Positions 20,909-64,000 of a stretch of 64,000 nucleotides of DNA are shown one piece after another. The notes under the pieces were generated by a model. It was not told the origin of the DNA. It saw nothing but the letters and a program-made list of their open reading frames with translations, and made no database searches. The stretch is from NCBI GenBank assembly GCA_002269645.1, contig NIVC01000739.1, positions 62,001 through 126,000 of the forward strand. Direction: 5' to 3'. The DNA comes from Macrostomum lignano. Its lineage: Eukaryota. The stretch's first letter is position 1; each line of letters opens with the position of its first letter. The position numbers and the translations under genes were made by a program.

Positions 20909-21989
20909 CAAAAACTGCTGTTTAAACCATCGAATCTCATTTCGGTGTCAGATGAAACTGTTTCTGATTGCGTCTTTTGCTGACTTCTTCATAATCCCAA
21001 CTATGAAGTGACTCTAAATTTTAAGTAAATTATTGATCTTGATTCTTCGCTTACTAGAAGTAGTATTGTGAACTTATTTTTGTGTCGGATTTAATTAGTT
21101 CAGTGTCTTTAGTCGGCAAAACTCTATAGCATGTGTACATAGGTAACAGTATATATAAATCAAATTTGTTTTAATATAAAATTACACTTTACCTTATCTA
21201 TACTTACAGTCTGTTTATTTTATACATATAGATAGTTCTCTGTGTTGTGCGAGACACTCTACTCAAGTGCACAAATATCTTATTGGCGTAATGATAACTA
21301 TTATATTCTGCTTGTTTGCCTCAGTTAATTCTACCTGTATCTGTATCTGTAACAAGTTTCCACACCGAATCCAAGTCTAGCCATAGCGCTACTCCACTAC
21401 CTCCTCACCAGCCTAAGTTGGGGCCTCCTTGTGACGCAAATTGCATCCTTCACAGTTTAAGACGAGAACCGCTAGCGTATTGTGTGAATTGCGTCATTTG
21501 AGATCTGAGAAGGCACTGGTTTCGGTTTGGAAACTTTACTCATATTGCTGAGTGTACTTTTGTGTCACGTGTCTGTCTGTACCCTGTGTTTGCCATTTTG
21601 TCTACACATGCATTAGAAATATAATTAAGCATATAGAATGATCAAAAACCAAAATAATTGGTTGAATTCTCTGTGTACTTGCAATTGCAATAAATCAATG
21701 CGATGCTACTGAGACACTGGTTTGTGCTTTATTTGCCATCACTATTATTCATTCGTAATCGCTAAAGAGAACGCAAATCTGCTCTTGCGCTACTGTTAGT
21801 AGTTTATAGGTTTGTTAAGGCTCTACGGGGTTTGCTATAATTACCCAGAGCAGTTGAGTTCTCAAGGAAGCATAATTGTGTTTGTTAATTTCATCTGCGT
21901 TATTCAGGATGTTCGTGTTTAACTTAGAAACTTAGGTAGGTTAAGGAGAAATTAATTAGTGTAATAATTATTTTGGTTGCTCAAGAGGC

Positions 21990-29349: not shown

Positions 29350-29766
29350 ATTTGGACAAAAGTTACCGTCGAAGGATAACGTTTAACGAAGTCAAATAAC
29401 CTAACCAAACCAAACAGGCAAATACCATAGCATTTGTTGGTTGGAAAATCGCAGTTATCGGCACTAAATATCAATAGCTAAACATGCCAAAAAGAATAAA
29501 ATTAGCCATCAGATAAAACGCGCATGCCTAATACAAATCTATAAACATTGTTCTGTTTCTATGCTGAGATTATAATTCTTTCTGTTTAGCATAAGATAAA
29601 ATATAAGCAACAAGTTTTTTATTCGCGAAGCGATTGATCTAGAGGCATCTTTTGGTATTACGCTAGTAAATTATTATCTCAATGGCTACAACCATACTAT
29701 ACTGGGTTCCAAGGTGATGGTTTTCAATGTTGCTGAGTATAGCTAGCTATAGGCCATTAGCTTGAG

Positions 29767-34589: not shown

Positions 34590-34967
34590 CGGATGCGCTG
34601 CTATCTGTAGTATGATTATGTGAAATCGGCAGAAAGTTCCATTGTTTACTGCATTGTAGTTGGTATATACCGCAGCTTATTACATAAACTTTATAGTTGG
34701 TAATAAATATGGGTACCAACACAATGGTTCTAAAGTAAAAAAGAAAAATATGTCACTCAGATGGTCGTAGAATTAATATACAAAGATACAAATTGGAGCC
34801 TCGTTATTTCAACATTAGTTTAGCAAGAGTATCCAGCTTTTAGGTAAAAAAACATTCAATTTCTACTCTTAGTAGACTGCAGAGGCAATATCAGTAAAAT
34901 ATCTTTTTTTTACTGTCTAGCTTCACGTCATTATAGTCTACACACTTTAGTCACCTCTAAACCACCT

Positions 34968-37662
34968 CTAGCCACCTCTTGGATGTAGCATCCACCCGCC
35001 CAGGAGATAGGGACAGAGGCGCTCATCGAGAGACATGGGCATCCACCAAAAAGGATTCCTTAATACTTCGATGCTTAAAATTTTCATTCTTAATCCAGAT
35101 TGTAACTTCCTTGCAAAGTTCGCGGTTGAGTACATCGGCGCATTGTATGGGTTTCCGCTTTTTTGACTACGCCGCACAGCCTGAGCATTTGCTTTGACCT
35201 GCACAAAACTGTTTAACAAATGGATTGCATAAAAGTAAGCCAGAAAATGGTGATCATGCTGAGGGTTTATAGTGAATGGTATTTACTAGATACCGGCTAT
35301 CTCCGTTATTGATAAGAGGTTTCGTTCACAAAAGTCAATCAAACCTGGTTAACAGTAGAGTTGAGCACGTCCCATTGGTCTATAAGCTCGTTTAACTGCC
35401 TTTGGATAGTTTCCGGGTGAGGTTCGACTCCCGAAGTGGATTGCAGCTGGGAAGGAATTCTGGTGCCAGCTTCCAGGGCTGCGTGGAACCGCTCCTCTCC
35501 GTCTGACATGCTGTGCTGGATCGCCTTGAATTTTTTATTTACACGTGTACATTAAAATGGGCGTAAAAATGATTTGGGTTATTACGAATGCAGCTGCTGA
35601 GATACTCACATTGAGGCGCCAATCCTCAATCTGATACCTGAGATCGCTGATATTCGATAGCGTGCTTTCTATCCATTCAGAAACGCACCGCCGTCGGCTT
35701 TCAAACTTTCCACACGCCGCAGCATATTTCTGGCTAAAGTGTTGCTTCCCGTTTGCCTGATTGGGATCGAGAAAAATAGCATGTGACGATAAGGTTTATG
35801 CGAAAAATGATGCAGGTTTTTGCGTAGGTTTCTTGAATTTCCGCAATCTTATACGTTTAAGTACAAAAATTATTCTTTTCTAACCTCTTTCAGTGACTCT
35901 TTTCAAACTGCTTTTATTTCTTTTTTCAAATATTAATTCAACCTGTTTTCACTGACGCTTATTATTACATTGCCAAAAGTGTCACAGCTTAAAATGAACC
36001 TCAAAAAGTGTCTCACCAGATTTTTAGCCGCCTCTGCTTTCAGAGAGTCGTAGCGGATGGCTAACAACGTCAACGATTCCTCGACATTCTGTTGGCTTTC
36101 TGTCCTGACTGCTTCTAGCTGGCTCGACTGCACCATGAGATCTCCGCCAAGTTGCTTGACCTTTTCTACAGTGCTCTGCCACTGATTGATTTCGTAGCAC
36201 AGGTCAGCCAGGCATTTCACCTGCTGATCAATGATGCTGAGGTCTTCGGAGTCCGAGATTGCTGATTGAATTCGCGGCAAGGATTCGGCCTTTTCGGAAA
36301 TCCAATTTAAGCAAAGCGAGAGTTCCCTTTCGAACTGTTGCTTCTTCACTTCTGTGACGGTTGTCTGCAAACACGTGTTTCAAAGTCGATTGAACAAATT
36401 GTGAGAGGTACAAATTCGTGTGATGATTAATTAAGGAAAATATCAAGTATAAATGCTTCTGCTTCTCGAAAAACTAAATGAAAATTTACTGAAACCAAAC
36501 GGAATGAGAGGAATGAGAGGAGCTCACTGGTGCAACCTCTTGGATGTAGCATCCACCCGCCCGGAGAGACATCAAGAGACTGGGGCGCCCAACAAAGGTG
36601 ATAGCAGTATAAGGATGGCGATCGACTGTCATTTAGGAATTATTAAGAATGAAACTTAGGTTTTAGGTTAGGGAATTAGGGAATTGCACTGCTATCAGAG
36701 CGTGGTGGAGTGTAGTTGTGGACAGCTGCACTCTTACAAAAAGCCACAAGCGCTCGAAGACGGTATTGCAAAGAGCGAGTGCAGGCCGCCCTAAAAGTCT
36801 GATCCACTGTAAAGGGTTGTATGCCTTTATGTGGAGGGGATTCAATTACATTCTGAACACTGAGACATTTCAGAAGTCACACGAGAGAGGGAGATCGTGG
36901 GAATCTGCCGGAATTGCGACGATGTCTGAAAGACGTGAGAAGCTGATAACGCAGACAGTTTCACAGGGACTGCATCGGGAAAATTCACTATAAATAAGCG
37001 AGGGTTAAATGCCTATTCTTTACTCTCTTTACTAACTTCTGACTTGCTTAAACAACTCGTCTCCAAATCGTTACTCCAAATCGTTCTAAGCGTGCCGATT
37101 GCTTTTGCAGACACCTGTGAACGGTGGGTAAGACTGAGCACTGCCATGACTATAGATTTATGAATATTAGCGTATTGGTCTCAGACCAAGTAGATAGGGC
37201 TTAAGCTATATACAATGGATTAATAAGAGCATTGTAGTAGCTTAGTTACACGGTAGTGTCCCTGTCTCAGGCGTGTTCTCCTTGCTTGTAGCTCGCTTAT
37301 TTGCTTAATTACCTACTTATTCGAACATTTAAACTAAAGTGATCAAATATAATGATATGGCTAACCGGAAACTACCGTCTAATTGTATTCTACCTTGTTG
37401 TCTTAGCGGAGTTATCGAACAATAAGAAGCTTTCGAACACATTTTCACAGAACTGTTTTCCAATTTTGCTAAATCAGTCAAAAAGTAAAATACACTGATT
37501 GATGATGCAATATGAACTCACATTTGGCGATATGTGAGACTGCGGTGGATACAGACTCTGCCCTTGCTCTGGCAGTACATACTCGTAATTGCTGGGGTGA
37601 GCCACGCTCGCTCTGCTCCCGGCGAGTTTGGCAGTTGATTTTTTGCTCTTCTGGTTGCCCAT
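34968..37662 (-). CDS. Myristoylation-motif first exon plus spectrin-repeat exons (short gene, distal 5' part of P1, or pseudogene)
   Basis: Phase-0 open exons 37662-37522 (MGNQKSKK...SPN), 36364-36017 (FERELSLCLNWISEKAESL...QWQSTVEKVKQLGGDL), 35756-35610 (KFESRRRCVSEWIE), 35524-35345 (QRQLNELIDQWDVLN). A fifth exon from 35198 looks frameshifted relative to a spectrin-like reading and runs into a repeat, stop at 34968. Confidence 0.6.
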
Positions 37663-37773
37663 TCCGTCTACAATTGAGCAGCTACCGAGGAAAAGTTCTT
37701 AAGGATGTTTAGAAACTTAAAACTGCTAGCTGTAGCAACTATACGGCTCTCTTTTAATGGGTAGCATCATAGC

Positions 37774-37781
37774 TATTTATA
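37774..37781 (-). promoter_or_regulatory. Putative TATA box of the MGNQKS exon
   Basis: TATAAATA on the minus strand ~110 bp upstream of ATG 37662, conserved with 58423-58430 in the homologous promoter. Confidence 0.5.
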
Positions 37782-38109
37782 GCCAAAGTGTACTGGTAAC
37801 AGATATGAATAATTGGATAGACAGAACGTACACCAGAGGGCCAACAGTGTAGTGCGCTTTTGCTGCTGGGCCTCCTGTATAGACGGCCGAATTGAGACAA
37901 TTGAACGAATTGTTGAGACAGAAAATATTGAGAGGCTGCAATCCGGTCAAGATTAAGCCAACTTGAATAGATGTACATTCTACATTGTACCGGTCAGGGG
38001 TTGGCAGACTCTGGCCTGCGGCCCGGGAAGCCTCTCTCTATCCGACCTTTGGGTCCTTTGAAAATTCACAACAGCTATTCTAAATGAAAATGAAATTAAA
38101 TTAAATTAA

Positions 38110-38285
<176 letters not shown>

Positions 38286-38964
38286 GTACAGACGGGTTTC
38301 ACTCATATGAGTGTGTCTAAGTTAAATTAAGTTTATCGAAATTGAATGTGAATTTGCCCCAGAACTTGAATTTAGACCAAGGAAAAATCGCTCTCAACGA
38401 GGAACTGTTTTATACTGAATATCCGCTGTCTAAAACGAATGTCTGGTGTCTAAATTGAAGTTCACTTTGTCTAATTTGAAGGTTAAGCTAAAAGTATAAA
38501 AATTAATGTGGAATTGTCTTAATTGTATTGCAGATTTGTTGAAATTGAACGGGAAAGGTGTAGTCTAGTCAAGCAAGCCAACCCTAACTTAAAATCCATA
38601 AGCCCCTTGTAACAGAATCTATTCTGAGTTTCGTTGTATTCGAAAAACTCTTCTCTATTTACTGCAGCCGCCGCAAGATCCTTGACACATGACCAAATTG
38701 TGTTTTTGAGGTCCTTTCCAAATCTTCTGGGTAAACTATAGTATTCTCCGAGTAGAATGGAATAGTCTGGCGATTAACCTGTCATATCAAAGAAAGCGTT
38801 GTCCAAAGCCTGTCGGTCGGTTAAGTGAAGGCGGCAGTCTCGGCATTTAATACGAACTCAGTAAATGCAGGTAGATCATCATAAGACTTGAAGCCGACCA
38901 CCAGTTTAAACACCTTGGGAAAGTTTTCCTGGAATTTGATATTGATGTTCTTGAACGGAGGGAG

Positions 38965-41968: not shown

Positions 41969-42486
41969 ATTTGTATTTAAAAATTAGTCAAAAATTACCA
42001 TCAAAGGAATTTACGTCAATATGATGGTTAAACCAATTCGGAAAATACTGCATGTATATATATATATATACTTTTCATATTGATATAACCACATTTATAT
42101 CGGAATAAGCATGTCAAAAGGTAAAAACTAGCCTTCAGATATAAGTTGCAAATAAACGGTAGATTTTCTTCCTTTTTGAAAAGGAATTGCAATTCCTTTA
42201 AATAAAGTAATATTTTATTATTGCGCTAATGAACTGCTAAACTGATCGAATGGCTCCAGATACACTGAGCAACACAGAAAACCGCAATCCTAGAGCACTG
42301 TAAGCTGAGTGATTGACTCCAGCTCAGGACACTGAAAATGAAGCAAAGATAGCCAACTATCGCTCAAGGTCTAAGGTGGCGGTTTTCAGTGATTCTGAGT
42401 TAACACAATATTAACTTGATATTATATATGCTCGTATACAATATATCTATATATATTCGTTTGAATAAACCCATCAACAGCGCAGC

Positions 42487-48072: not shown

Positions 48073-48431
48073 CTGATGCGCCGTTCTTTGCAGTATGAAG
48101 AGACAGACTGGTAAGCTTGTTTGCAGGAATCCCTCAGGTTGCGTTAAAATAGGTACTGACACAATGCTTCTAAAGTTCACCCGTTGTCTGCACTCACATT
48201 AAAACGGCGTACGTACACTCTGGGCATGCTACGAGATAAATATGCTATAACTCCACCTTATTGGTCAGGAGTGGTCTCTATCATAGTGTACAGTGTATAT
48301 CAATTTTGCAATTGTTTTGTTCTACTTTTAAAGCAGTTGTTAATGTGAAAAGAGTAAAGCATGTAGATCATTTTTTTATCATAAGTCATCAGTAAAATCG
48401 GTAAGATTTACTTTAGTTAGCAGTCGATTCC

Positions 48432-50087
48432 ATGCTGCAGATTAATTTTGCCGCAAATGCCTACGAGGTACCGCAGAACATTTCCGTAAGTTTCGGAGTT
48501 CCGTTTTATTGAATCATTAGTGATTTTTATGAACGATGGGCATCTAACATGCAAGTGCAAGAAAACTAAGCAAGCCTGCGTTTTAATTAAAGTTGTATTA
48601 CGAGTTTATGAAGTTAAAGAACCCCCGGTTCGATTCCCTGCATGGCCACATTAATTTGGAGGCTTGTACACGAAAGTTGGCCCTTGAGAGTGCACATGCC
48701 TGAGATGATTAGAAGTTAGGGCCGCTGTACACTCTGTGTAAGCGTGTGTATGAGTGCGTACCTGCGTACATGATGCGTTGCCTACAATTCTCCCGCAGAT
48801 ACTCGTATTGTTAACTCAATAAAAAATTTCAGCTACCCGCTACACGATTGGCCGCCTACGAGGACTTTCAACTCCTGACGAAAGAGGATCGAAAACTGAT
48901 GCGCAAGACGCAATGCGAGCTGGAAAATTCAAAGGAATGTTTCAAACCCGGAAAACAGGATCCGGCTGATGAAGAGAAAATTTTAATGGTAATTTTCTTT
49001 CTCAGAGAGACTATAGTACCAGTGTAAAACTTCTGCTCTTCTTAAAATAAAAATTATGAATCCACTTCGCCACGACCAGCTGCTGTACGAGTCCGTGCGC
49101 AACACTCAGCACCGACTGGCGAAAGCGGCCGAGGCGGCGGACACCCTAATGCTGGAGGCCGACTGTCCCAAAGGGGTGCACAAGCAGCTGCAGAGGCTGA
49201 GGAACGCTTGGGGCCCGCTTTACTCTGTGATGCAGCACATCCGCCGAGTGTTGGAGTCTGGTAGCGCTGGAAACCGATCTTCGGTACGCTTTTGAATCAG
49301 AAAAAAAGCTTCATAATTGTCCTATGACTTCAAGTTTTGATATTCCAATTATGGAATCCTAGACCTTTACTATATGGGTATTAGAAGTCTCTTTATTAGT
49401 CTCCAACATGGAAAACTGAAGCAGAAGGACTCTTTGCACTTATCACATGTAACATGTAATTGCATTTATCTATTCTTCCAGATCAGCAGCTGCAGCATTT
49501 TGGATTCAACGGAAGTTGTCCGAACTATGCTATCAAAGAGCCAGTCGGAAACTTCGGCCGAGTATTTGAAAATTGAAGATCGCGTTATTCGCTATACCAG
49601 ACCTGAGCACGGAATTGTCATCAAGGAGATCTGCAGCATCGAGCGTATTGAGAATCCCGTGCTGGATAGGCGGATGCGGGACTTTCGCCGCCAGCTGCAC
49701 AACCGCAACTGTCCACCGGAGCAGCTGTTCCACGGAACGAGGCAGATCAATGCCGAGAAAATCATTACCGATGGCTTCATTTTAGGCAATCGTGGAATGT
49801 TCGGCGCAGGGATCTACTTCGCCACGGACAGCACCAAGAGCGCGCAGTACTGCCAAGACACCGGCGTCAAGGCGTTGCTGCTGTGCGATGTGCTTCTTGG
49901 AAAGCACCAAGTGTGTCGAACTGCTCGAAATGATCTTAATTTTGAAACGCTAAGAGCTGAAGGCTTTGATTCCGTGTTCGCTCAGAGGGACTCCAGGGAG
50001 ACTCGAGGCGTGCTTAACGATGAGTTTGTCGTGTACGACCCGAGGCAGGCCGCCCCGAGGTACCTCATCAAGTTCAAGACAGCCTGA
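48432..50087 (+). CDS. PARP cluster gene P3: spectrin repeat plus tankyrase-like ART domain (~339 aa model)
   Basis: Phase-0 exons 48432-48485 (start uncertain), 48833-48988, 49080-49283 (ADCPKGVHKQLQRLRNAW), 49482-50087 (LFHGT, GMFGAGIYFATDSTKSAQY, NDEFVVYDPRQAAPRYL). Confidence 0.8.
48620..48790 (+). mobile_element. tRNA-SINE fragment in P3 intron 1
   Basis: GGTTCGATTCC B box followed by body shared with the 22.0-22.3 kb and 60.5-60.8 kb copies. Confidence 0.6.
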
Positions 50088-51022
50088 CTGGCTCTGGCTT
50101 TGAGATTTATAAAACTTAACAAGAATGATAGTCTTTGTTCTTGTCAAATATACGCTCGTAGATACAGTTTTATGTTTATTTTACAATTTTAAAACGATTT
50201 ATTATAAACATATACACGCATACGATGATATTTCTAGCTAGCTTTTACGTTAAAAAGTTCTTTACGACTCATACTAAGAAAATTTCATCATCAGAATAAG
50301 GTACTGACGTATGGTCTGATGTCACGCTTTTCTCATACCCTAAAATAACTCTCTGAGGAATGTTCCTTCTAAATGTACTCCTGACTTCACTCTAACTGCA
50401 CGGATTCTGTCAGTTGCATGGTTTCTTTTATTTCTTAGCTCGCATTGAATAGGTCCTTTAAAGATTTTAAATCCTTTTATTCTCAATTATGATTTATCAA
50501 ATCAATACATACATACATTTTATACTCGTACAATTGTGAAATTCACTTAAATTCAAGATCTGGGTGAGAAATGACTTGAGTAACTATTTTGGCTATGTTT
50601 ACGAGAATGGAAAACAGCTTAAAGCAATCGCAGAGAGTTGAAATCGCAAATTGCAATAAAAAAGTATTTTTCAACTTCTGATCAGCTCTCACCCGAAGGA
50701 AAAGTGATCAAATCGACAAATAACAGCAAAATGACCAAGCAACTAAATATCGAAATTTAGCACTCTAGCCATTGTTCTTTTCACTGTACAGTGGTGGAAT
50801 GTGCAGGAAATTGAGCATCGTACACAGTGAGTGTACTTGTACCTCGGAGGGATGCTTGAGAAGGGTTGTAATTTCCAACTCTGCTATTTTATAAGTTTTA
50901 AATCGTTTTTTTACTCGAGACATGACACCCCGTGTCTTGAAGCAACCCTAATTGTGTGACAAAGGAACTCAAATCAAGTGTCTTCAGTGTCATTAGAACC
51001 AATTAGAAAACTACGAGTAAGA

Positions 51023-51807
51023 ATGGGAAATTGTTTCAGCAAGCGGCGTTCGACGGTGAAAACAACTTTTTGACAGCTTTACTTTTCTTTGAAATTTTAT
51101 TTTGTAATTTTTATTAATTTATCATTTTTCTTGTGTCCTACTCACTTTAGCCGAGGTCACTTTACGAGGTACAATCCGAGTCTGTAGCTACCGAGCTCCA
51201 TCTTGCGCACCTATTGCATTCTGGATCAACGACACGAGTAAAGCGCGTCCCCATCACAGCGACAAGAAAGTGGACCGTCGCTGAGTTCCATCGCATTCGC
51301 GACAGGGTCCTACGATATGTGAAACCCGAGTACAACACAAGCGTCAACATCCTGAGCATTGAGAGAATCTGCAACCCAGCACTAGACCAGCGTCTTTACA
51401 ATGCCTTTTTCCAGCTGCATAAAAAGGACTGCGTTCCAGAGCTGCTCATTCACGGGACGTACAGCAACTCCGCTGAGAACATCATTAGCAACGGCTTCAA
51501 TGTTGGTACCCAAGGAATGTTTGGCGCAGGGATCTACTTTGCCACGGACACCTCAAAGAGTGTCCAATATGCTAGAGATAATAACGTCAAGACGCTGCTT
51601 CTCTGCGAGGTGCTTCTAGGAAAGACACTGATCTGCACATCTGCCCAAACAAACCTCAACCTGCAGACTGTGCAGAATCAGGGTTATGACTCGGTGTTCG
51701 CCAGGCGAGGGACGAAATCAACTCAAGGAGTGCTCAATGATGAGTACATTGTCTACCGGCCTGAGCAAGCTACACCACGATATTTAGTCAAGTTTACAAC
51801 TTCGTGA
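51023..51807 (+). CDS. PARP cluster gene P4: MGNCFS acylation motif plus ART domain (229 aa)
   Basis: Exon 51023-51055 (MGNCFSKRRST), 95-nt phase-0 intron, exon 51151-51807 with LIHGT, GMFGAGIYFATDTSKSVQY, NDEYIVY. Confidence 0.87.
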
Positions 51808-52371
51808 ACTATTTGAAACTTCCATTTGAGAAAGAGATTATTTTTATCATCTTAATTATTATGGAAGTAGCCGCTTTAAACTCGTTTTTAAACGTATTAG
51901 CATATTTGCTGTTTAAACTTTATTATGTTAAAATGCTAAACTTATATGTTGTGTTTGCTAAATAAATAATGTATCCTTGACATCAATTTAAAATTTGCTA
52001 AGAATTGTTTTCCTAACAACTTAGAATTCTCAAACGTCATTTTCGAATTATAAGGTACCAGGTACTTACTGTGTACGCATACCGCCCAGAAAGACGAATT
52101 TTTTTGGATATGAAACATTAACTGTACTATACTGTAAACTGCATTCAAGCCCTCACCTACTCATGCACTAAAATGGAAGTTCAGTGGAAGAGCAAATTAA
52201 ATTTTGTCCGATAAACAATAGGAATTACCCAGTCTAACGCAGAGCTGAGGACTCTCAGGATGATGTGGACAGAAAATATGCAAAGCGATATATAAACGTA
52301 GCCTCTCTTGGAAGAATTAGATATATTTTTTAACAACCCTATTTTGAGCCTCGAAATTAACAGTCTACAGA

Positions 52372-53413
52372 ATGGGAAGCTCAGCTTCAAGCCTTAGGAA
52401 AAAGAAGGCAAACCAAAATTCAACAGCAACACGTAGACAGGTAAATTTTAATAGGTGAGTTTTAAAACCATACGTTTTTCTACATGAGCTAGGTTCTATA
52501 TTTGCATGTGAAAACAATGGTTTGATCCCTAATGCAGGACAGTGCATGGTAGAAACGAACTAAAGCGCACAGAAATTAAAGAGAACGACGGGAACACTGC
52601 TCAAGAGTACTTCAAAGTGCTGGACAGAGTAGGAAGATACATCCGAGACGAGCACAATGTCAGCGTACAAATACTGAGCATTGAGAAGATTGAGAACCCA
52701 ATACTTGATATGCGCTTGCGGGATATTTCCCAGCGAATGCACGGCAGAAAACGTAGACCGGAGCTGCTCATTCACGGCACGAGAAGCAGATTTGTCGAGC
52801 AAATGATCAGAGACGGTTTCAGCTATCAGAGAAAGGGTCTGTTTGGTCAGGGCTTTTACTTCTACACTGACAGCACCAAAGCTGCTCGAGGTTGCGGTAG
52901 AGACGCTACAAAGTGCCTCCTACTGTGCGACGTGCAGTTGGGCAAGACCATGGCGATGGAGTCTGCTGACAGGAGTCTCAATTTGAGCAGTATTGAGTCA
53001 GCCGGATTCGACTCGGTTTACGGCGTTCGAGATACCAAGGAAAATGGAGGCGTCTTTAACGACGAGTACGTCGTGTTCCGATCCGAACAGATTGCACCAA
53101 GGTACCTCGTCTGGTTTACAAGTAAGCTTCTTGAAATTTTGCTTACTAGTTGGAAGTCAGTTTACCCACCCAATAGAAGTACTTCACGGAGTCAAAAAAA
53201 AGAATACAAAACATGCCTTAGAGTTAGTGCAAGAGTTATTAGACTCGTTTTAGTGCATTTCCTTGATCAGTACGAAACTTTTAAAAGTTAAAGACTTTCA
53301 AATTCGGGTTACGGAATGTATATCGGTATTTAAATTTGATGCAAAATAGAGTCCAACTGCATCTAAATTCCGCTTTTATATATACTTCGTATTTCTTGCC
53401 CACAGCTCAATAG
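52372..53413 (+). CDS. PARP cluster gene P5: MGSSAS motif plus ART domain with altered nicotinamide site (~224 aa)
   Basis: Exons 52372-52454 (MGSSASSLRKKK..., phase-2 GTGAGT donor), 52538-53121, 53406-53413 (ends WFTTQ*, like paralog ends FTTS*/FTT*). HGT, GLFGQGFYFYTDSTKAARG, NDEYVVF. Confidence 0.8.
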
Positions 53414-54466
53414 AAGTGTTTGCAACGCAAGCATCGATTCAAGGTGGCTTGCAACCTGTCATAAACTCTACAATTTTCAAATTCTGCACCAAATTGTGAT
53501 AATTTGTATTTCAATCGGCCGAGTCGGTAACAGAAGTTCAAATTTAAAGCACTGATTGCAAGTGACTGGAATTAAAACTGTTAGAAACTGCTGACTGTCT
53601 ATTAACTTTAGCTTTTCTGGTGACTTTAACCCTCGCTCCGAGTTTTACATGCTTTTAATATTAAATAAACTACCTCTGGGTCAATTCGTTTTCAGGAAAC
53701 GTCAAAAATCAACCATGTAGGTTGATACGACGTGTTTTGCACACCAAGGTGCATCGTTCTCAGGTGGTATATTGTTTGGAACGAGAGAAAGCCGTGAATA
53801 AAGCGAATTTATAAAATATTGTCAATGTAACTTGTAACGTAGCTATTGAACAAGTATTTCGTACGTAAGAAGTAGTTGGAGGTTGATAGTCCGTACGTAG
53901 GCCAGGGCGAAGACCAAACAAAATACAATTACGTGTAAATGTGCACTGGTTTCAAAATGATCAGTGCTCTGTCACTCAGAATATCAGAGCATATGATCTG
54001 CGCCACTTGCTAGAGTTGGGTATTAAGGGTGGGTGACGGGCTTTTAAACTACAAGGCTTCTTAGATCTTGAGTTTTTAATCAAAGTTCGGCTTTCTCTTC
54101 ATTTTACTTGCTAAATGAGTAACCTTACCTAAAAGCGTTTTCAAATAGCTCTACGTCTCAGTTGCAGTGGGCCTCCTTGATTTGTGTCGTTTTTAAAGTC
54201 TTAAAAAATCTGCTTTATGAATTAGCAGCGTGCAGAAGATAAGAGCTGATATATACATGTAAATCTGCTGACTTACCAACGCAGCAAAGCACAGAGAAGA
54301 AATTTTTGCGTTACTCGTACGAAAACTGTGTACATTGCAGTTGCATGTAAACTCAGAAAATGGAATTTTACATTGACTTCACTTCGAGCTGTTTTAACTA
54401 AAATTGTTTGTTTAGCTAAGACACGGGCCATCTGATTTAAAAAAACATTTCTTATTTTACAAAACA

Positions 54467-55205
54467 ATGGTAAGTACATGTATGTCAAATAAGAATTGTT
54501 CTAGTTATCATATACTGCAGGCGCTTATCACCTAAGTCACCTTGGGTACTTTGAATTCTTCAGACATCGAGTAAATACCAATCTGCAATGGTGGAGCTGC
54601 ACCTGGTGCCGTTGAAACCTCCAAAGGGTGACACGGAGGTCCAGCGAATTCCACTCACGGCATCGAACCTGTCAACTGTTGCCGAATACTACAGGATCTA
54701 CGACCGGGTCATGCGATACGTGAATCCTGTGCACAACACCACGGTGGAAATTCAAAGCATAGAAAGAATAGCAAACCCTGTACTGGACAGAAAACTGTAC
54801 GAAGTGCACAGCAGAATGCACAGGAAAGACTGCATACCGGAGCTTCTCATCCATGGAACAAAAGGCGAAAATGCTGAGAGCATAATTGGAAACGGTTTCA
54901 ATATTGGCAAGATTGGCATGTTTGGAGCGGGAATCTACTTTGCAACTGACAGTACTAAGAGTGCTTTATATGCTCGGGATAACTCTGTAAAAACTTTGCT
55001 ACTGTGCGACGTCCTCTTGGGTAAAACCATGATTTGCAAGGCTAGCAACAGTGAGCTGAACTTGGAATCAGTTGAGGCTAAAGGATATGACTCGGTGTTT
55101 GCGAAGCGAGGCACGAAACAAAGCAAAGGCGTGTTGAACGATGAGTACATCGTATACAGATCTGAGCAAGCCGCCCCAAGGTATCTCGTGAAGTTTACAA
55201 CTTAA
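54467..55205 (+). CDS. PARP cluster gene P6: stand-alone ART domain (~214 aa), paralog of P4
   Basis: ATG|GTAAGT at 54467-54469, 94-nt intron, exon 54564-55205 (or start at ATG 54588). HGT, GMFGAGIYFATDSTKSALY, NDEYIVY. Confidence 0.85.
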
Positions 55206-55888
55206 GGATAACACGCACATCGTATACATGTACATATATTCAGTGCATAGAAAACCAAAGTATAGAAACTTCACTCGCCAACCTTGCAAACTTCGTTGGA
55301 GGTCGGATTTTGCTGGAAATACCCTTAGCAAGTTGAGTAATTTTTCAATTTTTAGCACTTTTTCTCGACTCATTTGCTTGATTTATAATTCTGAACTCCA
55401 GTAGGTTATTGATTTAAATAATTGAAAGCTTGATTTTGCTCTTAATTGGCATTATCACAATAATTTTATACACAACGTGTAACCAAAAATATTAAGATAT
55501 AACTTTTTATTTGAAACAAATAAAGTTTTACTTATTAAAAGCCCCGATAGCTACTTTTTACCTCATACAGTTTCCTAATAAATTAAAATTATGTACTTCG
55601 AAATCGTCTGCACAGTTTCTTTTCTCACCATGTCGGCTAGAGTGCCAGATACAGCGATCGATATGATTCGCGCTCAAGCAATCTGAGACTTTTTTTGTCA
55701 ATTTTGAGTCTTTTTAACTGAGATATAAACAGATAAGATTTTATTTGCTTCAGGATATTATAGCTCGTAGGCTAAAGTCGCGTATACTTGTAGTGCAAAA
55801 ACTCAACTCTGCAAAAGTTGCAGCCAGGCTAACGAAGCAGCGAACTCAACTTAAATGTAATCCCTATTCATTTAACCTTTGAAAACGC

Positions 55889-56736
55889 ATGGGAAACTCA
55901 AAGTCTAAGAGCCGCGAATCAGGAGCCGCAGCTCGCGACAGACCGACAACTGCGACGATTAGATTTTTGATTTCACGAAGCTCAACGGCTTTGAGTCACG
56001 AACCTGAAAGTGCTGCCATAGACAACATCAAAAGAACAGTATTGAAAGAAGATGACGAGGACACCGCGCAGGAATACTTCAAAGTGCTAGACAGAGTAAA
56101 GCGCTATACAAAAGAGCATTATTATCCAATAATTAATTCGATCGAAAGCATCGAGAAGATTGAAAACCCTTTTCTAGACAGACGTCTCGTTGAAATTTCC
56201 AAGAAATTGCATGCAGTTCGAAGTCGACCGGAGCTGCTTATTCACGGCACGAGAAGCAGATTCGTCGAGCAAATGATCAGAGACGGTTTCAGCTATCAGA
56301 GAAAAGGTCTGTTTGGTCAGGGCTTCTACTTCTACACCGACAGCAGCAAAGCTGCTCGAGGCTGCGGTAGAGACACTATAAAGTGCCTCCTCTTGTGTGA
56401 TGTGCTCTTGGGCGAGACCATGGCGATGAAATCTGCTGACAGGAGTCTCAATTTGAGCAGAATTGAGTCAGCCGGATTCGACTCGGTTTACGGCGTTCGG
56501 GGTACCAAGGAATCCGGCGGCGTCTTCAACGACGAGTATGTTGTATTCCGGACCGAACAGATTGCACCAAGGTACCTTGTCAGGTTTCGAGAGGTGAGCA
56601 AATGCACAGTGCATATTTTTGTCTGCTCAACTTATGCACGGAGTTAATTCTTTGTTTTACTTATATTTACATTTTTGTTTCTTTCGACAATTTACAGAAC
56701 GCTTTTGAGGATTCGGAGAATCTTGGATCGAAATGA
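55889..56736 (+). CDS. PARP cluster gene P7: MGNSKS motif plus ART domain with altered nicotinamide site, paralog of P5
   Basis: Exon 55889-56593 plus probable last exon 56698-56736 (or unspliced stop at 56647). HGT, GLFGQGFYFYTDSSKAARG, NDEYVVF. Confidence 0.85.
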
Positions 56737-57578
56737 GCGACTCGTCTGTCGATTCCTATTGCTAATAGCAGATTGTACTTTACATTAGCCAATTAAACAC
56801 TACGAGAGTAGAACCTATTGTCTGTAACTTTTCTACGCTGACAATATTTTGTAAGAAGTCAATGAATCCGAAATTACGCATCAATTTTTTTTAAAATCCA
56901 CGGCTGTATGATCCATAGGCAATAGGCAACTATACACCTAGCAGTATTCAGTTTGATGATGGAGGGGTTTATTTACAATTTGATAAAAGCAAACGGTTAA
57001 GTACATTAACGTGCTATTGCAAAACAAGAAAATCAAATTGCCAGTTTAGAAGTTTAGTTGAACTGTCAGTTTCACTCCTAATATCTGCTGTTTACCTATA
57101 CCAAATTCAAGGGTTTATTGAATGTGCATGGTTTTGAAACGTTTCATTGAAACTCACCACGATAGTTGGCGTTATAGATGTTCCCCAATGTAAAACTCAT
57201 TAGAGATGGTCTCCCGAATTGATACTTCACCGTCTTTAACAACGCGTCGCACTCAATGTTCTGATGAAGACATTGCACAGAAGTCGGCGTGGGCATCGCG
57301 TCTTTCTCGAGTGTAGTGCTCTAACGCTCTCCCTGTCATTTATGGCTAGTTAGCGATTAGCGATTTTTCCTTAGTTGACGCGTAGTACAAATACCAGTCA
57401 TCAGAAACATTCTTGCACTGCTTCGGAAAGAGATTATCAATGCTCAGTTCATCCGGACACTGTAGATACGCGCGCAGAGCTGACGAGTCCCGACGGCTTA
57501 CGTGCGCTTGAGGCGTCCTCGAACGAGAAACGAAGCCTTAGCATTCTTGATAATAATGCCATGATTCAAGACAACAAA

Positions 57579-58142
<564 letters not shown>

Positions 58143-58422
58143 TAGGTAGATAGGTAGACAAAGAGAGGGGAGAGAGGGAAAGGGAGGGTAAGAGAGAGGG
58201 AGCAAAATTCCATGAAGGTACATTGGACACGATACAGTATAGAATGCACATCTATTCAAGTTTGGTTTTATTCTAACCGGATTGCAGTATCTCAGTATTT
58301 TCTATCTCAACAATTCGCTGCAATTGTCTCAACTCAGCCAGTGTATAGGAAGGCCACTAGCAAAAGCGCATTACACCGTTGGCTCTCTATAAAGTGTACG
58401 TTCTATCTGTTGGCGTCTCAAT

Positions 58423-58430
58423 TATAAATA
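58423..58430 (+). promoter_or_regulatory. Putative TATA box of the spectrin-repeat gene
   Basis: TATAAATA ~110 bp upstream of the CTG at 58541; conserved in the inverted copy at 37774-37781. Confidence 0.5.
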
Positions 58431-58540
58431 GCTTTGATGCACCCATGAAAGAGAGCCGTTGCTACAGCTAAGCATTTTTTGGGCTTCTAAATATCCTTGA
58501 GAATTTAAATTTTCTCGGTAGCTGCTTAAGGGCAGACAAA

Positions 58541-61500
58541 CTGGGCAATCAGGCGAGCCGAAGATCGGCTGCCAAGCTTGCCAGGAGCAGAGCGAGCATG
58601 GCTGAGTCAGTGAACTCCACCAGCATTCAGTTAGACTACACTGTTCCTGAGAATTTTCAGAAAGGCATTGCTCATTCAGCAGTTTTTGTTAAATTCTGTC
58701 GAACAGCCAAAGAGCATAGAAAAACGTATGCGATCTACAGAGCAGAAATTGATTATGAATTGCTCAGATTACCGACCGAACAGACTCTGCCATTGACGGA
58801 GAGGAGAGATGCTGGCTTGGTAAGAACGCTTGTATAATTCATTTACACTACTCGATCGTTAGCTCGTAATTGAGTGAGCTAGTCTGAAAAATGAATTATA
58901 CAGAGAGTTAGTGAAATCTAGTGTAATAAAGTATTCTGATTTATACAGTACTTGTCCACGATACTCACCACTGAATCGATAGTGACAAATTTCGCTGCTG
59001 AGATGAACAAAGGAGTCGTAGACAGTGAAGATTCCAAGATTAAAGGCCTAGCTATTTCTAAATATGCTAATAATATTCAAAAAATCTTTCTGTTATCTGC
59101 TCAGCTGCCTCATCTCATTGGTATGCTAGAAGTTTCGCACTTTATTTTCAGAAACTGCAGCAGCTCTTAGAATCCGAGCAATGCAGTCTGGCAGACGCCC
59201 AAGTGGCGTTTGAGAAGCTGCGGTCAGCCAAGAACTGTCCAGGCAAAGTGCATCGCCAGTTCAAGAAGCTTCAGCAGACTTCAGACGAGTACGTTGAGCA
59301 GCTGCAGCAAGCTCTGAACAGAAGGGAGATCTCTGAAGCAATGGACAAGTGGGCTCATTGCCACAGAGAATTCAGCCGGATGCAATCCTGGGTATCTGGT
59401 AAAGAGAACAGCTTGAGGACGCTGCAAAGCTCACAAAAGACTTCACTCATTGACAGAAAAAGCCAACTTACTGAACTTGAGGTAATTTACAAAAATCTGT
59501 GCAAATTGTTGTTGTTATTCACTTCAAGTAAGGAAAAATGTAAAATTTTGTTTAAAAAAGTAACCATACGTGCGTATGATCGTGCTGGTAGTAACAATAA
59601 AAACAATACTACGTGAAAATCACTGTACTTTCTAACTATAGAAGCTGCTTGATTCGATTAATGCTTTGGAATCGAACTTTAACGGGTGGCAGAAGCTGAA
59701 AGAGGAGTTTTCAGCTTTTCTCTATGACGACAACTTGACTTCCAGGTACAAGAGTCTGCAAGATACTGCACAGGTGATTTTAATATATAAAAAACAATTG
59801 AGCATTTTATATGTAGCTGTTCCATGTCTTTTTTGCAATTGCAATATCTATGCATATAATATATAATAACTACAGCAGGTCGTGGGAGACATGAGGCGCT
59901 CCGTATCTCTGCAAAATGTATTCGACTCCCACGTCGCGGAGTTCCAGTCGTGGCTCGATCAGCAGGAACTTCGAATAGGAGCTGTACTCAATAAACCCGA
60001 CAATGAAATATGCTTAAGGCCATTTGCTGATGATCCTGACATTGAAGAAGCAGAAGAGAAGCTGAAGGATCTGAAACATATCGAGAAATTTTTTAATCAA
60101 ACGGAAACATATTGGCTCATGAACACGCATTCCAATGGAAGGGCTCTCATTGACAGCTGCAGGCAAAATGCCAATCTTCAGCGAGAGACGGAAAGTCGAA
60201 TCTCAGCAATGGATTCGCTATGCAAACAAGTGAAGGTAAGAGGAATCATAATCTTCTTTAGCCTATGAGGCTATATGTAATTCTTGGAATACTACAATAA
60301 GAATATCCTGCAATACTCCAACTATGTAGGACCGACTACAAGAAGAGATTTGGACCAGCAGTTGTGCTTCAGCGATGGCAATACTTGAATCAGTTCGGAC
60401 TTGGATTGAAAGCAAAAGTTTTAAACTGGCTCAGCGAACTTCCTTCGAGAAAAAGGAGCTAGCCGTGGCAAGTTTATTATTTGTTTAAATTGACTCCTAA
60501 AGCTCCTAAAGCATGGTTGTACCCTAAAACAAAACAGTGGTCAGTGCGGCGCTCTGATGTGCCGCGATTCCAAGGCTCGATTACAAGTGCAATTACAATT
60601 ATTTCGGCGCTCAATTGGAATCTCGGCTTTGCTCTGCTCGTGCAATTATCGCTCTTGAGGCCCAACCCCCCAAGCCACAGTGAAGTGTACATGCCTAAAG
60701 ATAAATAAATTTAGGGTGGCTGTACACTCCTGTGTGAGTGTGTGCCTGTGCGTATGACTGCGTACGTATCCGCGCGCTTGTGTGCCTGTTTAGGGGAGTC
60801 AGCGGAATGGGCAGAAATTATGCCTCTTGCCGGTAAAAATGCGTGACCAGCATCCTGTGGTTGTTGATATTAGAGAACATGAACGCATTCCGATTCTACT
60901 AGTTAAAATTTAAAATAATGAAGGGTTAATCAAGACAAAGACTGATTTACGACACTTTTGATGACACAAAAACTCTAATAAGTGTCATTAGACTCCTCCT
61001 AAAAACTCTATTATTATTTTTAGAGGCAGGAGGCTGAGTGCACCCAGGCGAACTTTAGGCGACATTGTCAAAACAAAAATAGACTAGCTAGCTACTAGGA
61101 TTTAAAAAATGCACCAAAAACGATGGATTCTGCATAATTTCAGGAAATAGAGTCAACAAGAGAAACTGTCCAAGTCAGAGTGGATGAAGTGCAGAATCTC
61201 CGTAAGAGCCAGCAGGATGCTGGGCTATTTTTCTATGAGGCTAAACTGGCGCAACTTGAGCAAGCGTGGGCTCGAACTGACAAGCTGTTAAACGATACAT
61301 GCATCAAGGTTGAAGATGCTTTCAAGAACTGGTCGGCACTCCAGGATCAGAAAGTCGTGCTGACTGACTGGTTAGATACATCAGATAGTCGGCTCAAAAG
61401 TTTGAGCAAACACAGGGTTCGGCTCATGGATAGGACTCAGCAACTGAGAGAACTCAAGGTAGGTCACACAAGCCTTGAGTGAAAAACTCTTACAAAGTTC

Positions 61501-64000
61501 TTACAAACTTTTTACATCCTTACAAGTTTCCCACACATATCGAAATGACCAATTTTGGTGCTTCAGAGCTTAACGGAAGAAACTGATGCACGAAAAGGCG
61601 ACTTCGAGCTTCTGCTGCAGTTAGGTGAGGAGTTTTCAGATGCAAATTTTGACAGAGAAGAAGCTACGAGTAATTTGACAGAAATCGCGCGAACCAGCTG
61701 GAACAGATTCGAGGAGTTAAGGAAGAGAGCTTTAGTAAGTACGCTTGCGCAAACCTCAATTTCTGTTTTATTGCTGCTCTAACAATTCACTGCAAATCCT
61801 GCTTTTTTGTTTGATGCTGTTCAGAAACTGCGGGAGAGTCTATCGGCTTCAGTGGAGATCCAAAAGCGCTTTGAAGAGGAGCTGAAAAGCTTTCGGAATT
61901 GGTCCACCGAGGCTCGAGCTAGTGAAGCCAATCTACTTATCAACACAAGCCTTGAACCCGTTAATGCCGCAGCAGCGTCCGCGCAGCTAAGCGAAGTGAA
62001 GTATTTACAATGTGAAGTTGAACATCATTCCTCATCGCTGACCAGAATTGCAGAAATTGGCCAGAGACTGGCTCAAAGTGACGAGTTAAACGCCGGTCTT
62101 CGTGAGCGCATTTTACAGCAGAAGAAAGGAATTGAAAAACTATACGGCAAATTGAAGGTTCAGCTGGAGTCTAAGAAGGTGAGTCCGTGACGTTAATGGG
62201 TATACCATTTTGAACTTACTGTGGAGTTCTTCAATAAACGACATCGCCCTCTCCATCTCACAGAAAATAGCTGACAGACATAATCGGATGTGCAAGAAGT
62301 TAGCCGAATTTAATTATTTGACTGACAAAGCGAAATCTTGGATGAAGAAGTGCCATCAGAAACTTGACAGGATACGCAGTAGTCTGAATATGGTCCCTGT
62401 TGAAGAACGTGACGTTATGGTGAGAGCAGATCTTGTTGATGCACTTGTAAATAAGCTTGCAAATGCCGAACACTGATGCCATAAACCTGCGCAACCCAAT
62501 TAGCTCATTAAATCGGAAATTAGCAACGGAAAATTACACAACCTGACGCGCGCAATCGAGGCTGGCGAGGGTCTCAAGCAGAAATCGAACTGTCCTCCCT
62601 ATGTCGCTGCATATGTCAAAGAGGTCGAGGGTCTGTGGTGCTCGCTGGACTACAAGTTAACCAGAGTGCAGAAGGAGGTTAAGGATTCGATTAGAAAGCG
62701 GCTCGAAGTGCGGCAGCAACTGCAGGAAGCCGACAGCAGGCTGAAAGATTTGGAGACGCTTTTCAATGATCTGTCACGGCAGAAAAAAGTTCTTCTAAAT
62801 GAGCAAGTTCAACAGGTTAATGAGCTTAAGGTAAGCTGAATCAGAGAGAGTCAGATAAAATAATATATTTTCAAGAATTAGAAAGCCTTGTTCTTCTAGC
62901 TTTTGTTCTAACTTTCGTGCTGTAACCATCAAGCATTCCTTCAAAATCGAATTCGGCACATTTTTCAAGGTATTCAGCTTCTAATTGTTCTATTTTCAGA
63001 CACTAAAAGAAGATGGTCATAAATTGAAGACATCACTAGAGCAACTAAACCGAAGCGCGTCAATGCAGAGGTATGGCGTCAGAGAACAACATGACTCATT
63101 ATTAAATCGTTGTCAAACGCTTCAGAAAACGGTTCAGGTAAGTTTAAACAATTTTAATCTGTGAGGGGTGTCCCAGAAGTAATGTCACTTTTTCTTGTAA
63201 AGCTTATTCTAATGGAACACTTAACTGGGAAACACATGATAAAGCGGCACAGTCTAGCTAAATTTTGACGTTGAAATTTGGAAAAAATTACACACTTTCT
63301 AGTTGTGGCAGAAAGTAAAAATGAATCTACTTCTGGGAAACCTAGTGGCGTCGCAGCTAGGACGACAGGGGGGGGGGGGTACGATCCCTCCAAGAAAAAT
63401 CTATGGGGGGGCTACCAATGCTTTGCCTTCCACCCTATCTTGTGACCAAGAGGACCAAAAAGATGGAAATAAAAAATTTTGCTTCAAGGCGTCATGATGA
63501 GTGCCTGCGGTGCCTAAATGACAATAATGGTGCAACACTGATTCCCAAAATAATACAGGAATTTAGTCATGCCAAAATCTTGGCTTTGTCCCCCCACCAT
63601 AAAATCCATAACGACGCCCCAGGGGAAACCCCGTAGTTGCAGAAGCAACAATAGTGATTCCAATCAATTGCAGACATTGCTTGACGAGCTGTCCAGCTCT
63701 GTGAAAGAGCAGCAGACTTGGACTGCTTCCGTTGAAAAGTTCAAAAGGGATGTCCAAGAATGGATGAAGCTTTGCAGTGACTGCACGGTTCAAGAAAACG
63801 ACGCAACTGAACATTCGGGAAAATGGCAGAGCCTAGCAGAACAGCTGGCCAAAACGGGCGAAGAGATGCAAGTAAACTTTGATGCAATGCAACAGAAGTA
63901 CCTAAGACTTGCAGACAGTCACCACAGCAGTCTTGATCTTCATGAACAAATGCACGAAATAAATCGTTCTTTTTGTAAAGCTAAGGACGGTGCAGCTGCA
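58541..64000 (+). CDS. Large spectrin-repeat protein (nesprin/dystrophin-like rod), 5' part; continues beyond the window
   Basis: Frame-consistent phase-0 exons 58541(CTG)/58598(ATG)-58819, 59152-59481, 59642-59773, 59876-60235, 60330-60467 (GC donor), 61144-61458, 61567-61734, 61825-62178, 62264-62419, 62504-62830, 63000-63137, 63674->64000. Recurrent spectrin helix-A Trp motifs (MQSWVSGKE, FQSWLDQQE, LTDWLDTSD, FRNWSTEA, AKSWMKKC). Confidence 0.88.
60530..60830 (+). mobile_element. tRNA-SINE copy in spectrin-gene intron
   Basis: CAGTGGTCAGTGCGGCGCTCTGATGTGCC...GGCTCGATT head; body matches the reverse complement of 22.0-22.3 kb. Confidence 0.7.

What the first reader, a model, noticed from the sequence alone, without database searches (positions are those of the whole stretch)
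58240..58620. Spectrin-gene promoter and exon 1 are invertedly duplicated at 37.6-38.0 kb; the original has CTG where the copy has ATG-Gly
Seen: 58240-58600 aligns by eye with the reverse complement of ~37600-37980, including the TATAAATA. The copy reads ggaATGGGCAACCAGAAGAGC (MGNQKSKKSTAKLAGSRAS). The spectrin gene reads aaaCTGGGCAATCAGGCGAGC (xGNQASRRSAAKLARSRAS), open and in frame for 19 codons to ATG 58598, with A at -3 and G at +4. Known: CUG in strong context can initiate translation and is decoded as Met. Inference: either non-AUG initiation makes a myristoylated long isoform, or an ancestral ATG was lost. The duplication also shows how PARP genes could acquire this promoter and anchor.
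Basis: partly seen in the sequence, partly recalled or inferred. Interest (0 to 1): 0.75.

Follow-up and report, generated by a model that had tools for sequence, protein, structure and literature searches.

The report
Start codon moved in duplicated flatworm PARP gene
Two neighbouring, oppositely oriented PARP-family genes of the flatworm Macrostomum lignano share a duplicated promoter and first 21 codons, and one of them has lost the original ATG and gained a new ATG 19 codons downstream, which probably removes a predicted lipid anchor; this is an ordinary kind of gene-family evolution.

Summary
Window 58230-58603 (+) and 37992-37600 (-) are an inverted duplicate (blastn E 1e-64). It covers a TATAAATA box, the 5' leader and 21 codons. 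The 58-kb gene reads CTG...ATG where the 37-kb copy reads ATG...GTG.

The window is Macrostomum lignano contig NIVC01000739.1. The "spectrin gene" is a long helical-repeat PARP-family gene, intact for 989 codons to the window's end.

Two other loci bear on the question. The annotated paralog P0001 (BOX15_Mlig034564g1) starts MGNQASRRSTAKLARNRASV, that is ATG...GTG like the 37-kb copy. A near-identical twin of the 58-kb gene on another contig (L003) carries the same CTG...ATG, so CTG is not an assembly error.

Best reading: the ancestral ATG-Gly start, a predicted N-myristoylation and polybasic anchor, was lost. A GTG-to-ATG change at codon 20 made the new first AUG of the leader, in strong context. 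The main product then lacks the anchor.

Low-level CUG initiation giving a myristoylated long isoform, as in HCK p61/p59, is not excluded and was not tested. Decay of the gene is not excluded either.

The 37-kb first exon is a chimera of this module and a PARP-type first exon. Interest is modest.

The parts
58230..58603 (+). Duplicated module, 58-kb type: promoter, 5' leader and first 21 ancestral codons
   Evidence: blastn E 1e-64 against 37992-37600. 83.6% identical to L001. 98.4% identical to the twin L003.
58423..58430 (+). TATAAATA box, conserved in all four copies
   Evidence: Alignments.
58541..58543 (+). CTG at the position of the ATG start codon of the paralogs (aaaCTGg against ggaATGg)
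   Evidence: The same CTG is in L003 at 12557-12559.
58541..58597 (+). 19 codons (L)GNQASRRSAAKLARSRAS, homologous to the coding N-terminus of P0001. Now a 5' leader, or a CUG-initiated extension.
58598..58600 (+). ATG where the paralogs have GTG. First ATG after 58445, context gcgagcATGg.
58598..58819 (+). Exon 1 coding part of gene 1, donor gtaaga
59152..64000 (+). Exons 2-12 of gene 1 (59152-59481, 59642-59773, 59876-60235, 60330-60467, 61144-61458, 61567-61734, 61825-62178, 62264-62419, 62504-62830, 63000-63137, 63674-64000+). All are phase 0, with no stop codon. The gene runs off the window.
   Evidence: Projection of the P0001 exons and the refined model.
37600..37992 (-). Duplicated module, 37-kb copy
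   Evidence: Homology to L001 runs further upstream, to 38080.
37774..37781 (-). TATAAATA of the 37-kb copy
37522..37662 (-). Chimeric first exon of gene B, 47 codons (MGNQKSKKSTAKLAGSRASVAHPSNYEYVLPEQGQSLYPPQSHISPN), donor gtgagt. Codons 1-21 come from the module. 37580-37535 and the intron start 37523-37427 are homologous to the first exon and intron of the PARP genes at 48 kb and 34.5 kb.
35342..36364 (-). Next exons of gene B, including a Pfam Spectrin repeat. They are homologous to late exons of gene 1 that lie beyond the window's end.
57427..58143 (.). (GATA)n array upstream of the 58-kb module
38111..38290 (.). (GATA)n array upstream of the 37-kb module

Best explanation
An old duplication left two types of one gene head (TATA promoter, leader, first 21 codons) in a cluster of Macrostomum lignano PARP-family genes. 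The ancestral head began ATG-GGC (MGNQxS followed by basic residues), a predicted N-myristoylation plus polybasic membrane anchor. In the lineage of the 58-kb gene that ATG became CTG and codon 20 changed from GTG to ATG. If the TSS lies at the usual distance from the TATA box, ATG 58598 is the first AUG of the mRNA and sits in strong context. Scanning ribosomes should then start mainly there and make a protein without the anchor. Shown: the duplication, the two reciprocal codon differences, their presence in two loci each, and an intact ORF of 989 codons. Inferred: the polarity of the changes, the TSS, use of ATG 58598, and myristoylation of the ATG-type proteins.
For: The duplication and the codon states are. 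P0001 (M. lignano BOX15_Mlig034564g1) starts MGNQASRRSTAKLARNRASVAESV, and so does P0002, which comes from a different source database (UniRef/MetaClust rather than NCBI). The twin locus L003, on another contig, has the same CTG...ATG, with a 98.4% identical promoter and dS 0.028. CTG is therefore real and older than that split. Both contigs hold one ATG...GTG head and one CTG...ATG head. Other PARP genes of the cluster also start MGN: 55889 MGNSKSK, which is 100% identical to the annotated P0007, and about 48072 MGNVLAKK. No ATG lies between 58445 and 58598, and there is no in-frame ATG in the open frame upstream of the CTG. The 19 codons differ from the 37-kb copy largely at synonymous or K/R positions, with omega about 0.36 on very few sites. 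Gene 1 keeps 12 phase-0 exons, every acceptor (AG) and every donor (GT, with one GC donor shared with the paralog), and only in-frame indels relative to P0001.
Against: With two clades of two sequences the root is ambiguous by parsimony. Polarity rests on functional logic and on the MGN starts of more distant paralogs. No transcript, TSS, ribosome or protein data were available. NCBI annotates no gene over gene 1. The twin has a 4-nt frameshift in exon 8. omega is 0.67 and does not differ significantly from neutral for the recent branch (p=0.16). CUG in the context A(-3)/G(+4) can initiate, and the extension carries no stop or indel.
Confidence: 0.55

Rival explanations
1. Dual initiation. Some ribosomes start at CUG 58541, decoded as Met. 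The Met is removed and Gly2 is myristoylated, giving a minor membrane-bound long isoform beside the major AUG-initiated soluble one, as in HCK p61 (CTG) and p59 (ATG).
For: The CUG has A at -3 and G at +4. It is in frame, with no stop for 19 codons, and G-N-Q-A-S-R fits the N-myristoylation pattern. The extension has no indel in four copies, and 17 of 19 residues match P0001. A predicted 6-bp hairpin (AGCCGA-AGA-UCGGCU) begins 13 nt after the CUG, and a substitution specific to the 58-kb type removes the mismatch seen in L001. The HCK precedent is described in PMC7097926.
Against: The gain of a strong AUG 19 codons downstream is unnecessary if the CUG sufficed. The fold is not unusual (z -1.43). 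Conservation of 57 nt over a short branch carries no weight. Nothing is known about near-cognate initiation in this animal.
Confidence: 0.2
2. Gene 1 is a silent or decaying duplicate. The CTG is then one lesion among others, and the ATG at codon 20 is a coincidental V-to-M change.
For: No gene is annotated over it in the NCBI record. The twin L003 has a frameshift in exon 8, and its annotated CDS starts only in exon 9. omega is 0.67, and for the recent branch it cannot be told from 1. The family shows other decay: MEN instead of MGN at 34.6 kb, and a truncated PARP exon in gene B.
Against: 989 codons are open, all 11 introns keep their splice sites, and the indels of 3, 6 and 12 nt are in frame. 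Against L001, synonymous changes are in excess (p=0.03). A G-to-A change at exactly the first base of codon 20 has roughly a 5% chance on this branch, a rough estimate from the 35 unique changes in about 350 sites.
Confidence: 0.22
3. The CTG is an assembly or sequencing error, and the true sequence is ATG.
For: The assembly was built from long reads, and the paralog shows ATG.
Against: An independent locus on contig NIVC01000621.1 has the same aaaCTGggc and the same downstream ATG. Three adjacent bases differ from the paralogs (GGAA to AAAC), which is not a typical error.
Confidence: 0.02

Closest known systems
Start-codon turnover (loss of an ancestral ATG and use of a downstream in-frame ATG) between paralogs or orthologs
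   Same: The reciprocal pattern ATG...GTG against CTG...ATG, with the frame kept open. The new ATG is the first AUG of the leader and has a strong context.
   Different: Here it would remove a predicted lipid anchor. It sits in a duplicated promoter and exon-1 module of a rapidly rearranging gene cluster. Polarity is inferred, not rooted by an outgroup.
HCK p61/p59: two isoforms from one mRNA, by CTG initiation upstream of the ATG (PMC7097926; Robbins et al. 1995, cited there)
   Same: A CTG about 20 codons upstream of, and in frame with, a strong ATG. The codon after the CTG is Gly, in a myristoylation-type motif.
   Different: For HCK the initiation and the lipidation are shown by experiment. 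Here there are no data. In HCK both isoforms begin Met-Gly, whereas here the short form begins MAES and cannot be myristoylated.
Src-type N-terminal anchor: myristoyl-Gly2 plus a basic cluster
   Same: MGNQ(A/K)S(R/K)(R/K)..K....R in P0001 and in the 37-kb copy. MGNSKSK and MGNVLAKK in neighbouring PARP genes.
   Different: This is a motif match only, with no test of modification. The cargo is a helical-repeat PARP protein, not a kinase.
PARP superfamily, with a catalytic domain closest to tankyrase by sequence
   Same: P0001 residues 1526-1698 match Pfam PARP at 5.6e-22. The best PDB matches are tankyrase-1/2 at E about 3e-8.
   Different: There are no ankyrin or SAM domains. Instead about 1500 aa of helical repeats are encoded by alternating exons of about 110 and about 50 codons. 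The catalytic part of gene 1 lies outside the window.

Membership tests
N-myristoylated proteins (NMT substrates) | Initiator Met immediately followed by Gly2 | tested here: not met
   The 58-kb gene has CTG-GGC, and its twin L003 has the same. The feature is met in the 37-kb copy (ATG-GGC) and in P0001.
N-myristoylated proteins (NMT substrates) | G-{EDRKHPFYW}-x-x-[STAGCN]-{P} after the Met (PROSITE-type pattern, quoted from memory) | tested here: met
   G-N-Q-A-S-R in the 58-kb gene and P0001; G-N-Q-K-S-K in the 37-kb copy.
N-myristoylated proteins (NMT substrates) | Covalent myristate on Gly2 | not testable with these tools
   Needs metabolic labelling or mass spectrometry.
Alternative non-AUG (CUG) initiation, HCK type | Near-cognate codon in strong context, in frame with the AUG and with no stop between them | tested here: met
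   aaaCUGg, then 19 open codons to gcgagcAUGg.
Alternative non-AUG (CUG) initiation, HCK type | Stable structure about 14 nt downstream that pauses the scanning subunit | tested here: inconclusive
   A 6-bp hairpin is predicted 13 nt after the CUG. The whole-segment z-score is -1.43, and 16 of 200 shuffles fold as well.
Alternative non-AUG (CUG) initiation, HCK type | Constraint on the extension after loss of the AUG | tested here: inconclusive
   There are 2 synonymous and 2 non-synonymous differences from L001 in 18 codons, and 1 synonymous difference from the twin. That is too few sites.
Alternative non-AUG (CUG) initiation, HCK type | Ribosomes or protein shown to start at the CUG | not testable with these tools
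   No Ribo-seq or proteome data were at hand.
PARP catalytic domain proteins (PF00644) | Match to the catalytic domain profile | tested here: inconclusive
   Gene 1 leaves the window after 989 aa. Its paralog P0001 matches at 5.6e-22. The annotated gene of the twin locus has PF00644 on record.
Spectrin repeat proteins (PF00435) | Profile match to spectrin repeats | tested here: not met
   Gene 1's 989 aa give no Spectrin hit at E<=1. P0001 gives Spectrin_Anc-1 at 0.011, below the cut-off. Gene B exon 2 does match PF00435 at 4.3e-9. An AlphaFold model of exons 8-10 is all-helical but of low confidence (pLDDT 59.8).

The most novel reading that the evidence does not exclude
The 58-kb gene uses the retained CUG and the new AUG together. 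That would split one PARP-family protein into a minor myristoylated, membrane-bound form and a major soluble form, a flatworm counterpart of HCK p61/p59. The lineage-specific substitution that completes a hairpin 13 nt after the CUG would then be an adaptation for it.
Probability: 0.15. Interest if true: 0.5.

Novelty: new member of a known kind. Interest (0 to 1): 0.3.

Why it matters
This is a clean, datable example of how paralogs in a fast-evolving gene cluster change protein targeting. One point change removes a predicted lipid anchor and another supplies a new start codon. Recombination between first exons moves the same promoter and anchor onto another gene body. It also corrects the local annotation: an intact gene of at least 989 codons is not annotated in the public record. 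It offers a simple test case for near-cognate initiation in a flatworm that can be made transgenic. It does not open a new class of mechanism.

Tried and rejected
1. A word-indexed homolog search with the 93-aa exon-1 peptide found nothing, although P0001 shares long exact stretches with it. Short queries are lost by that index. The 979-aa query found P0001.
2. Exact-product look-ups of the exon-1 ORFs and of the PARP ORF read through to its stop found nothing.
3. An exhaustive HMMER search with exon 1 found only one related 50% cluster (P0002, which has the same N-terminus as P0001). The other hits were weak matches to FN3-like repeats. No further head sequences were available to root the tree.
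4. I considered whether the spliced leader of M. lignano, which ends in ATG (PMC8629364), could replace the lost start codon. I rejected this. The only AG nearby (58534-58535) would put the leader's ATG 8 nt before GGC, out of frame, opening a 26-codon overlapping ORF (read directly from the sequence).
5. I considered whether the 'copy' is a simple duplicate of exon 1. I rejected this: it is chimeric.
6. Structure prediction of exons 8-10 gave low confidence, so no fold search was run.
7. No paper mentions these gene identifiers or this PARP family in Macrostomum.
8. Locus L003 never reached the script folder, so I copied part of it by hand into.

Full report
**Observation.** Window 58230-58603 on the + strand matches 37992-37600 on the - strand: blastn E 1.3e-64, 74% identity including gaps, 78.5% over ungapped columns. 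The window holds no other copy. The shared unit contains a TATAAATA box (58423-58430 and 37781-37774), about 110 bases of leader, and 21 codons. The 58-kb side reads gacAAACTGGGC...GCGAGCATGGCT. The 37-kb side reads gacGGAATGGGC...GCGAGCGTGGCT. A (GATA)n array lies about 100 bp upstream of each unit.

**Source and gene identity.** A search with a crude spliced model of the 58-kb gene returned one protein, P0001. This is Macrostomum lignano BOX15_Mlig034564g1, 1699 aa, with a C-terminal PARP catalytic domain. A PARP ORF of the window (55889-) is 100% identical to M. lignano BOX15_Mlig020831g1. The contig fetched for it, NIVC01000739.1, is identical to window 45889-64000. The window is therefore positions 62001-126000 of that contig in assembly GCA_002269645.1.

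I projected the 20 exons of P0001 onto the window. This gives 12 phase-0 exons from 58598 to the window's end: 989 codons without a stop, every acceptor AG, every donor GT except one GC donor that the paralog shares, and only in-frame indels. Pfam finds no spectrin repeat in these 989 residues even at E<=1. A structure model of exons 8-10 is all-helical but of low confidence. By homology the gene is a long helical-repeat protein with a PARP domain beyond the window. 'Spectrin gene' is not an accurate label. The NCBI record annotates no gene there.

**Comparison with other heads.** The genomic locus of P0001 (L001, contig NIVC01000621.1) has ggaATGGGC...GCGAGCGTGGCT, as the 37-kb copy does. The same N-terminus, MGNQASRRSTAKLARNRASV, appears in P0002, which comes from a different source database.

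L001 is collinear with the window's minus strand: a gene A homolog, then the head, then the gene body, then PARP exons, then the Rho-type GTPase region at 93-94% identity. By position it therefore corresponds to the 37-kb copy. However, its exon 1 remainder and exons 2-12 are homologous to the 58-kb gene at 83-89%.

A third locus is L003, about 100 kb away on the same contig as L001. It lies 1.6 kb downstream of the 90%-identical homolog of the window's last PARP gene. It carries a near-identical twin of the 58-kb head and gene: promoter 98.4% identical, dS 0.028. It has the same CTG (L003 12557) and the same ATG (12614).

Two conclusions follow. First, CTG is not an assembly error. Second, both contigs hold one head of each type, so the split into an ATG...GTG type and a CTG...ATG type is older than the duplication that produced the two contigs. 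M. lignano is a recent hidden polyploid (PMC10468722).

**Polarity.** The four heads form two pairs, so parsimony alone cannot root the two sites. I infer that ATG-Gly is ancestral for three reasons.
- The 19 codons upstream of ATG 58598 are homologous to sequence that is coding in P0001. They differ from the other heads largely at third positions or by K/R exchanges (omega 0.3-0.36, on very few sites).
- The motif G-N-Q-x-S-basic fits the N-myristoylation pattern.
- More distant PARP genes in the same cluster also begin MGN: MGNSKSKSRES at 55889 and MGNVLAKKRES at about 48072.

The lineage of the 58-kb head has 35 unique substitutions in about 350 sites. On that basis I estimate roughly a 5% chance for a G-to-A change at exactly the first base of codon 20. 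This makes a compensatory or permissive link between the two changes plausible but not proven.

**Mechanism.** With a TSS at the usual distance downstream of the TATA box, about 58450-58460 (inferred), the leader contains no AUG before 58598. The open frame upstream of the CTG has no in-frame ATG. ATG 58598 has A at -3 and G at +4. The most likely product therefore starts MAESVNS and lacks the Gly2 and polybasic N-terminus kept by P0001 and by the 37-kb gene. The CUG has an equally good context, so some initiation there is possible. If it occurs, Met removal would expose Gly2, as in HCK p61, which starts at a CTG upstream of the p59 ATG (PMC7097926). A predicted 6-bp hairpin begins 13 nt after the CUG, and a substitution specific to the 58-kb type removes the mismatch seen in L001. 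The fold as a whole is not exceptional (z -1.43).

I also considered whether the M. lignano spliced leader, which ends in ATG (PMC8629364), could supply the start. The nearby AG would place it out of frame, so I rejected this.

**Is the gene alive?** In favour: the long intact ORF and the preserved splice sites, and an excess of synonymous change against L001 (omega 0.67, p=0.03). Against: there is no annotation. The twin has a 4-nt insertion in exon 8 that breaks the frame, which explains why its annotated CDS starts in exon 9. The recent branch cannot be told from neutral (p=0.16). I put about 0.2 on the decaying-gene reading.

**The 37-kb 'copy'.** Its first exon (37662-37522, 47 codons) is a chimera. 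Codons 1-21 and everything upstream come from the module. From about 37580 the exon and the start of its intron are homologous to the first exon and intron of the PARP genes at 48.0 kb and 34.5 kb (85% and 77-78% identity). The PARP-type start (ATG GGA) is replaced by in-frame codons there. The following exons (36364-35342) are intact and include a Pfam Spectrin repeat. They correspond to late exons of the 58-kb gene, so about 15 internal exons are missing. The gene's own PARP exon breaks off after 'RNPF' at about 35.03 kb.

**Verdict.** The best-supported reading is a start-codon relocation that removes a predicted lipid anchor in one paralog lineage. CUG initiation remains an untested possibility. 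This is a new example of a known kind of event, of modest interest.

Noticed in passing
window 29756-34700 and 42455-48200 (- strand): A direct segmental duplication of about 12.6 kb covers a whole PARP gene (85-96% identity). The first exon of the 48-kb copy reads MGNVLAKKRESRYPPQS. The 34.6-kb copy reads MENVLPRQQESRYLPQS, so Gly2 is replaced by Glu. That would be a second, independent loss of the predicted myristoylation site.
   Followed up: partly
window 48800-56650 (+ strand): Five tandem short PARP-domain genes, sharing a repeated catalytic motif at 49716, 51436, 52758, 54837 and 56228. The last begins MGNSKSKSRES and equals the annotated BOX15_Mlig020831g1. All keep the motifs HGT...G.G.YFA...DEY/F.V.
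   Followed up: partly
L003 15850-16207 (contig NIVC01000621.1): The twin of the 58-kb gene has a 4-nt insertion (CTGT) early in exon 8 that breaks the reading frame. The public CDS there starts at an internal Met of exon 9. This is either a real pseudogene lesion or an assembly error.
   Followed up: partly
window 34971-35282 and 36430-36639 (- strand): Gene B's PARP exon stops being homologous after 'RNPF' and runs into sequence encoding GGWMLHPRG. The same sequence is also present in the intron at 36.5 kb, so it is probably a short repeated element.
   Followed up: partly
L001 9975-10003; window 58516-58543: Five bases before the start codon, L001 has cccaaTTTCAG|acgga. This fits the M. lignano trans-splice acceptor motif YTNCAG (PMC8629364). 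The 58-kb type has taagGGCAG and the 37-kb copy has TTGTAG. Whether any of these mRNAs is SL trans-spliced is unknown.
   Followed up: partly
window 58445-58471: The 58-kb type and its twin have an ATG (cccATGaaa) where the other heads read ATA or TTA. It is 22 nt after the start of the TATA box, and it is in frame with the CTG but closed by TAA after 8 codons. It would be a short uORF if the TSS lies further upstream than expected.
   Followed up: no
window 58556-58570: Predicted hairpin AGCCGA-AGA-UCGGCU 13 nt after the CUG. The ACT-to-GCT change specific to the 58-kb type turns a C-A mismatch into a C-G pair. A second hairpin that pairs the U and G of codon 20 (AUG or GUG) is predicted in all three heads.
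   Followed up: partly
window 58620-58690 (exon 1): The peptide STSIQLDYTVPENFQKGIAHSAVFV gives weak HMMER matches (E 1.7e-10 to 2e-4) to repeated units of large proteins. The one match inspected (P0005) has fibronectin-III-like repeats (NSIQLDWTKPEQGAHNITSYTVFY).
   Followed up: no
window 12024-13555, 17746-18749, 19153-19731, 20335-21006, 24724-25201, 25956-26286, 26697-26931, 45869-46850, 47457-47847: The window is unusually rich in minisatellite arrays, with units of 176, 32, 27/52, 25, 23, 22, 17, 31 and 17 nt. Several lie inside or beside genes. A 2.67-kb direct repeat (11037-12008 and 13708-14678) flanks the 176-nt array.
   Followed up: no
window 3528-4427 (+); 39000-39650 (+); 18600-20250 (+); 24433-27155 (+): By eye only: a mariner-type transposase ORF, an RNase H-like retroelement fragment, exons resembling a Vti1-type SNARE, and exons of a Rac/Cdc42-type small GTPase. 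The GTPase region is 93-94% identical to the region downstream of P0001 in L001.
   Followed up: no
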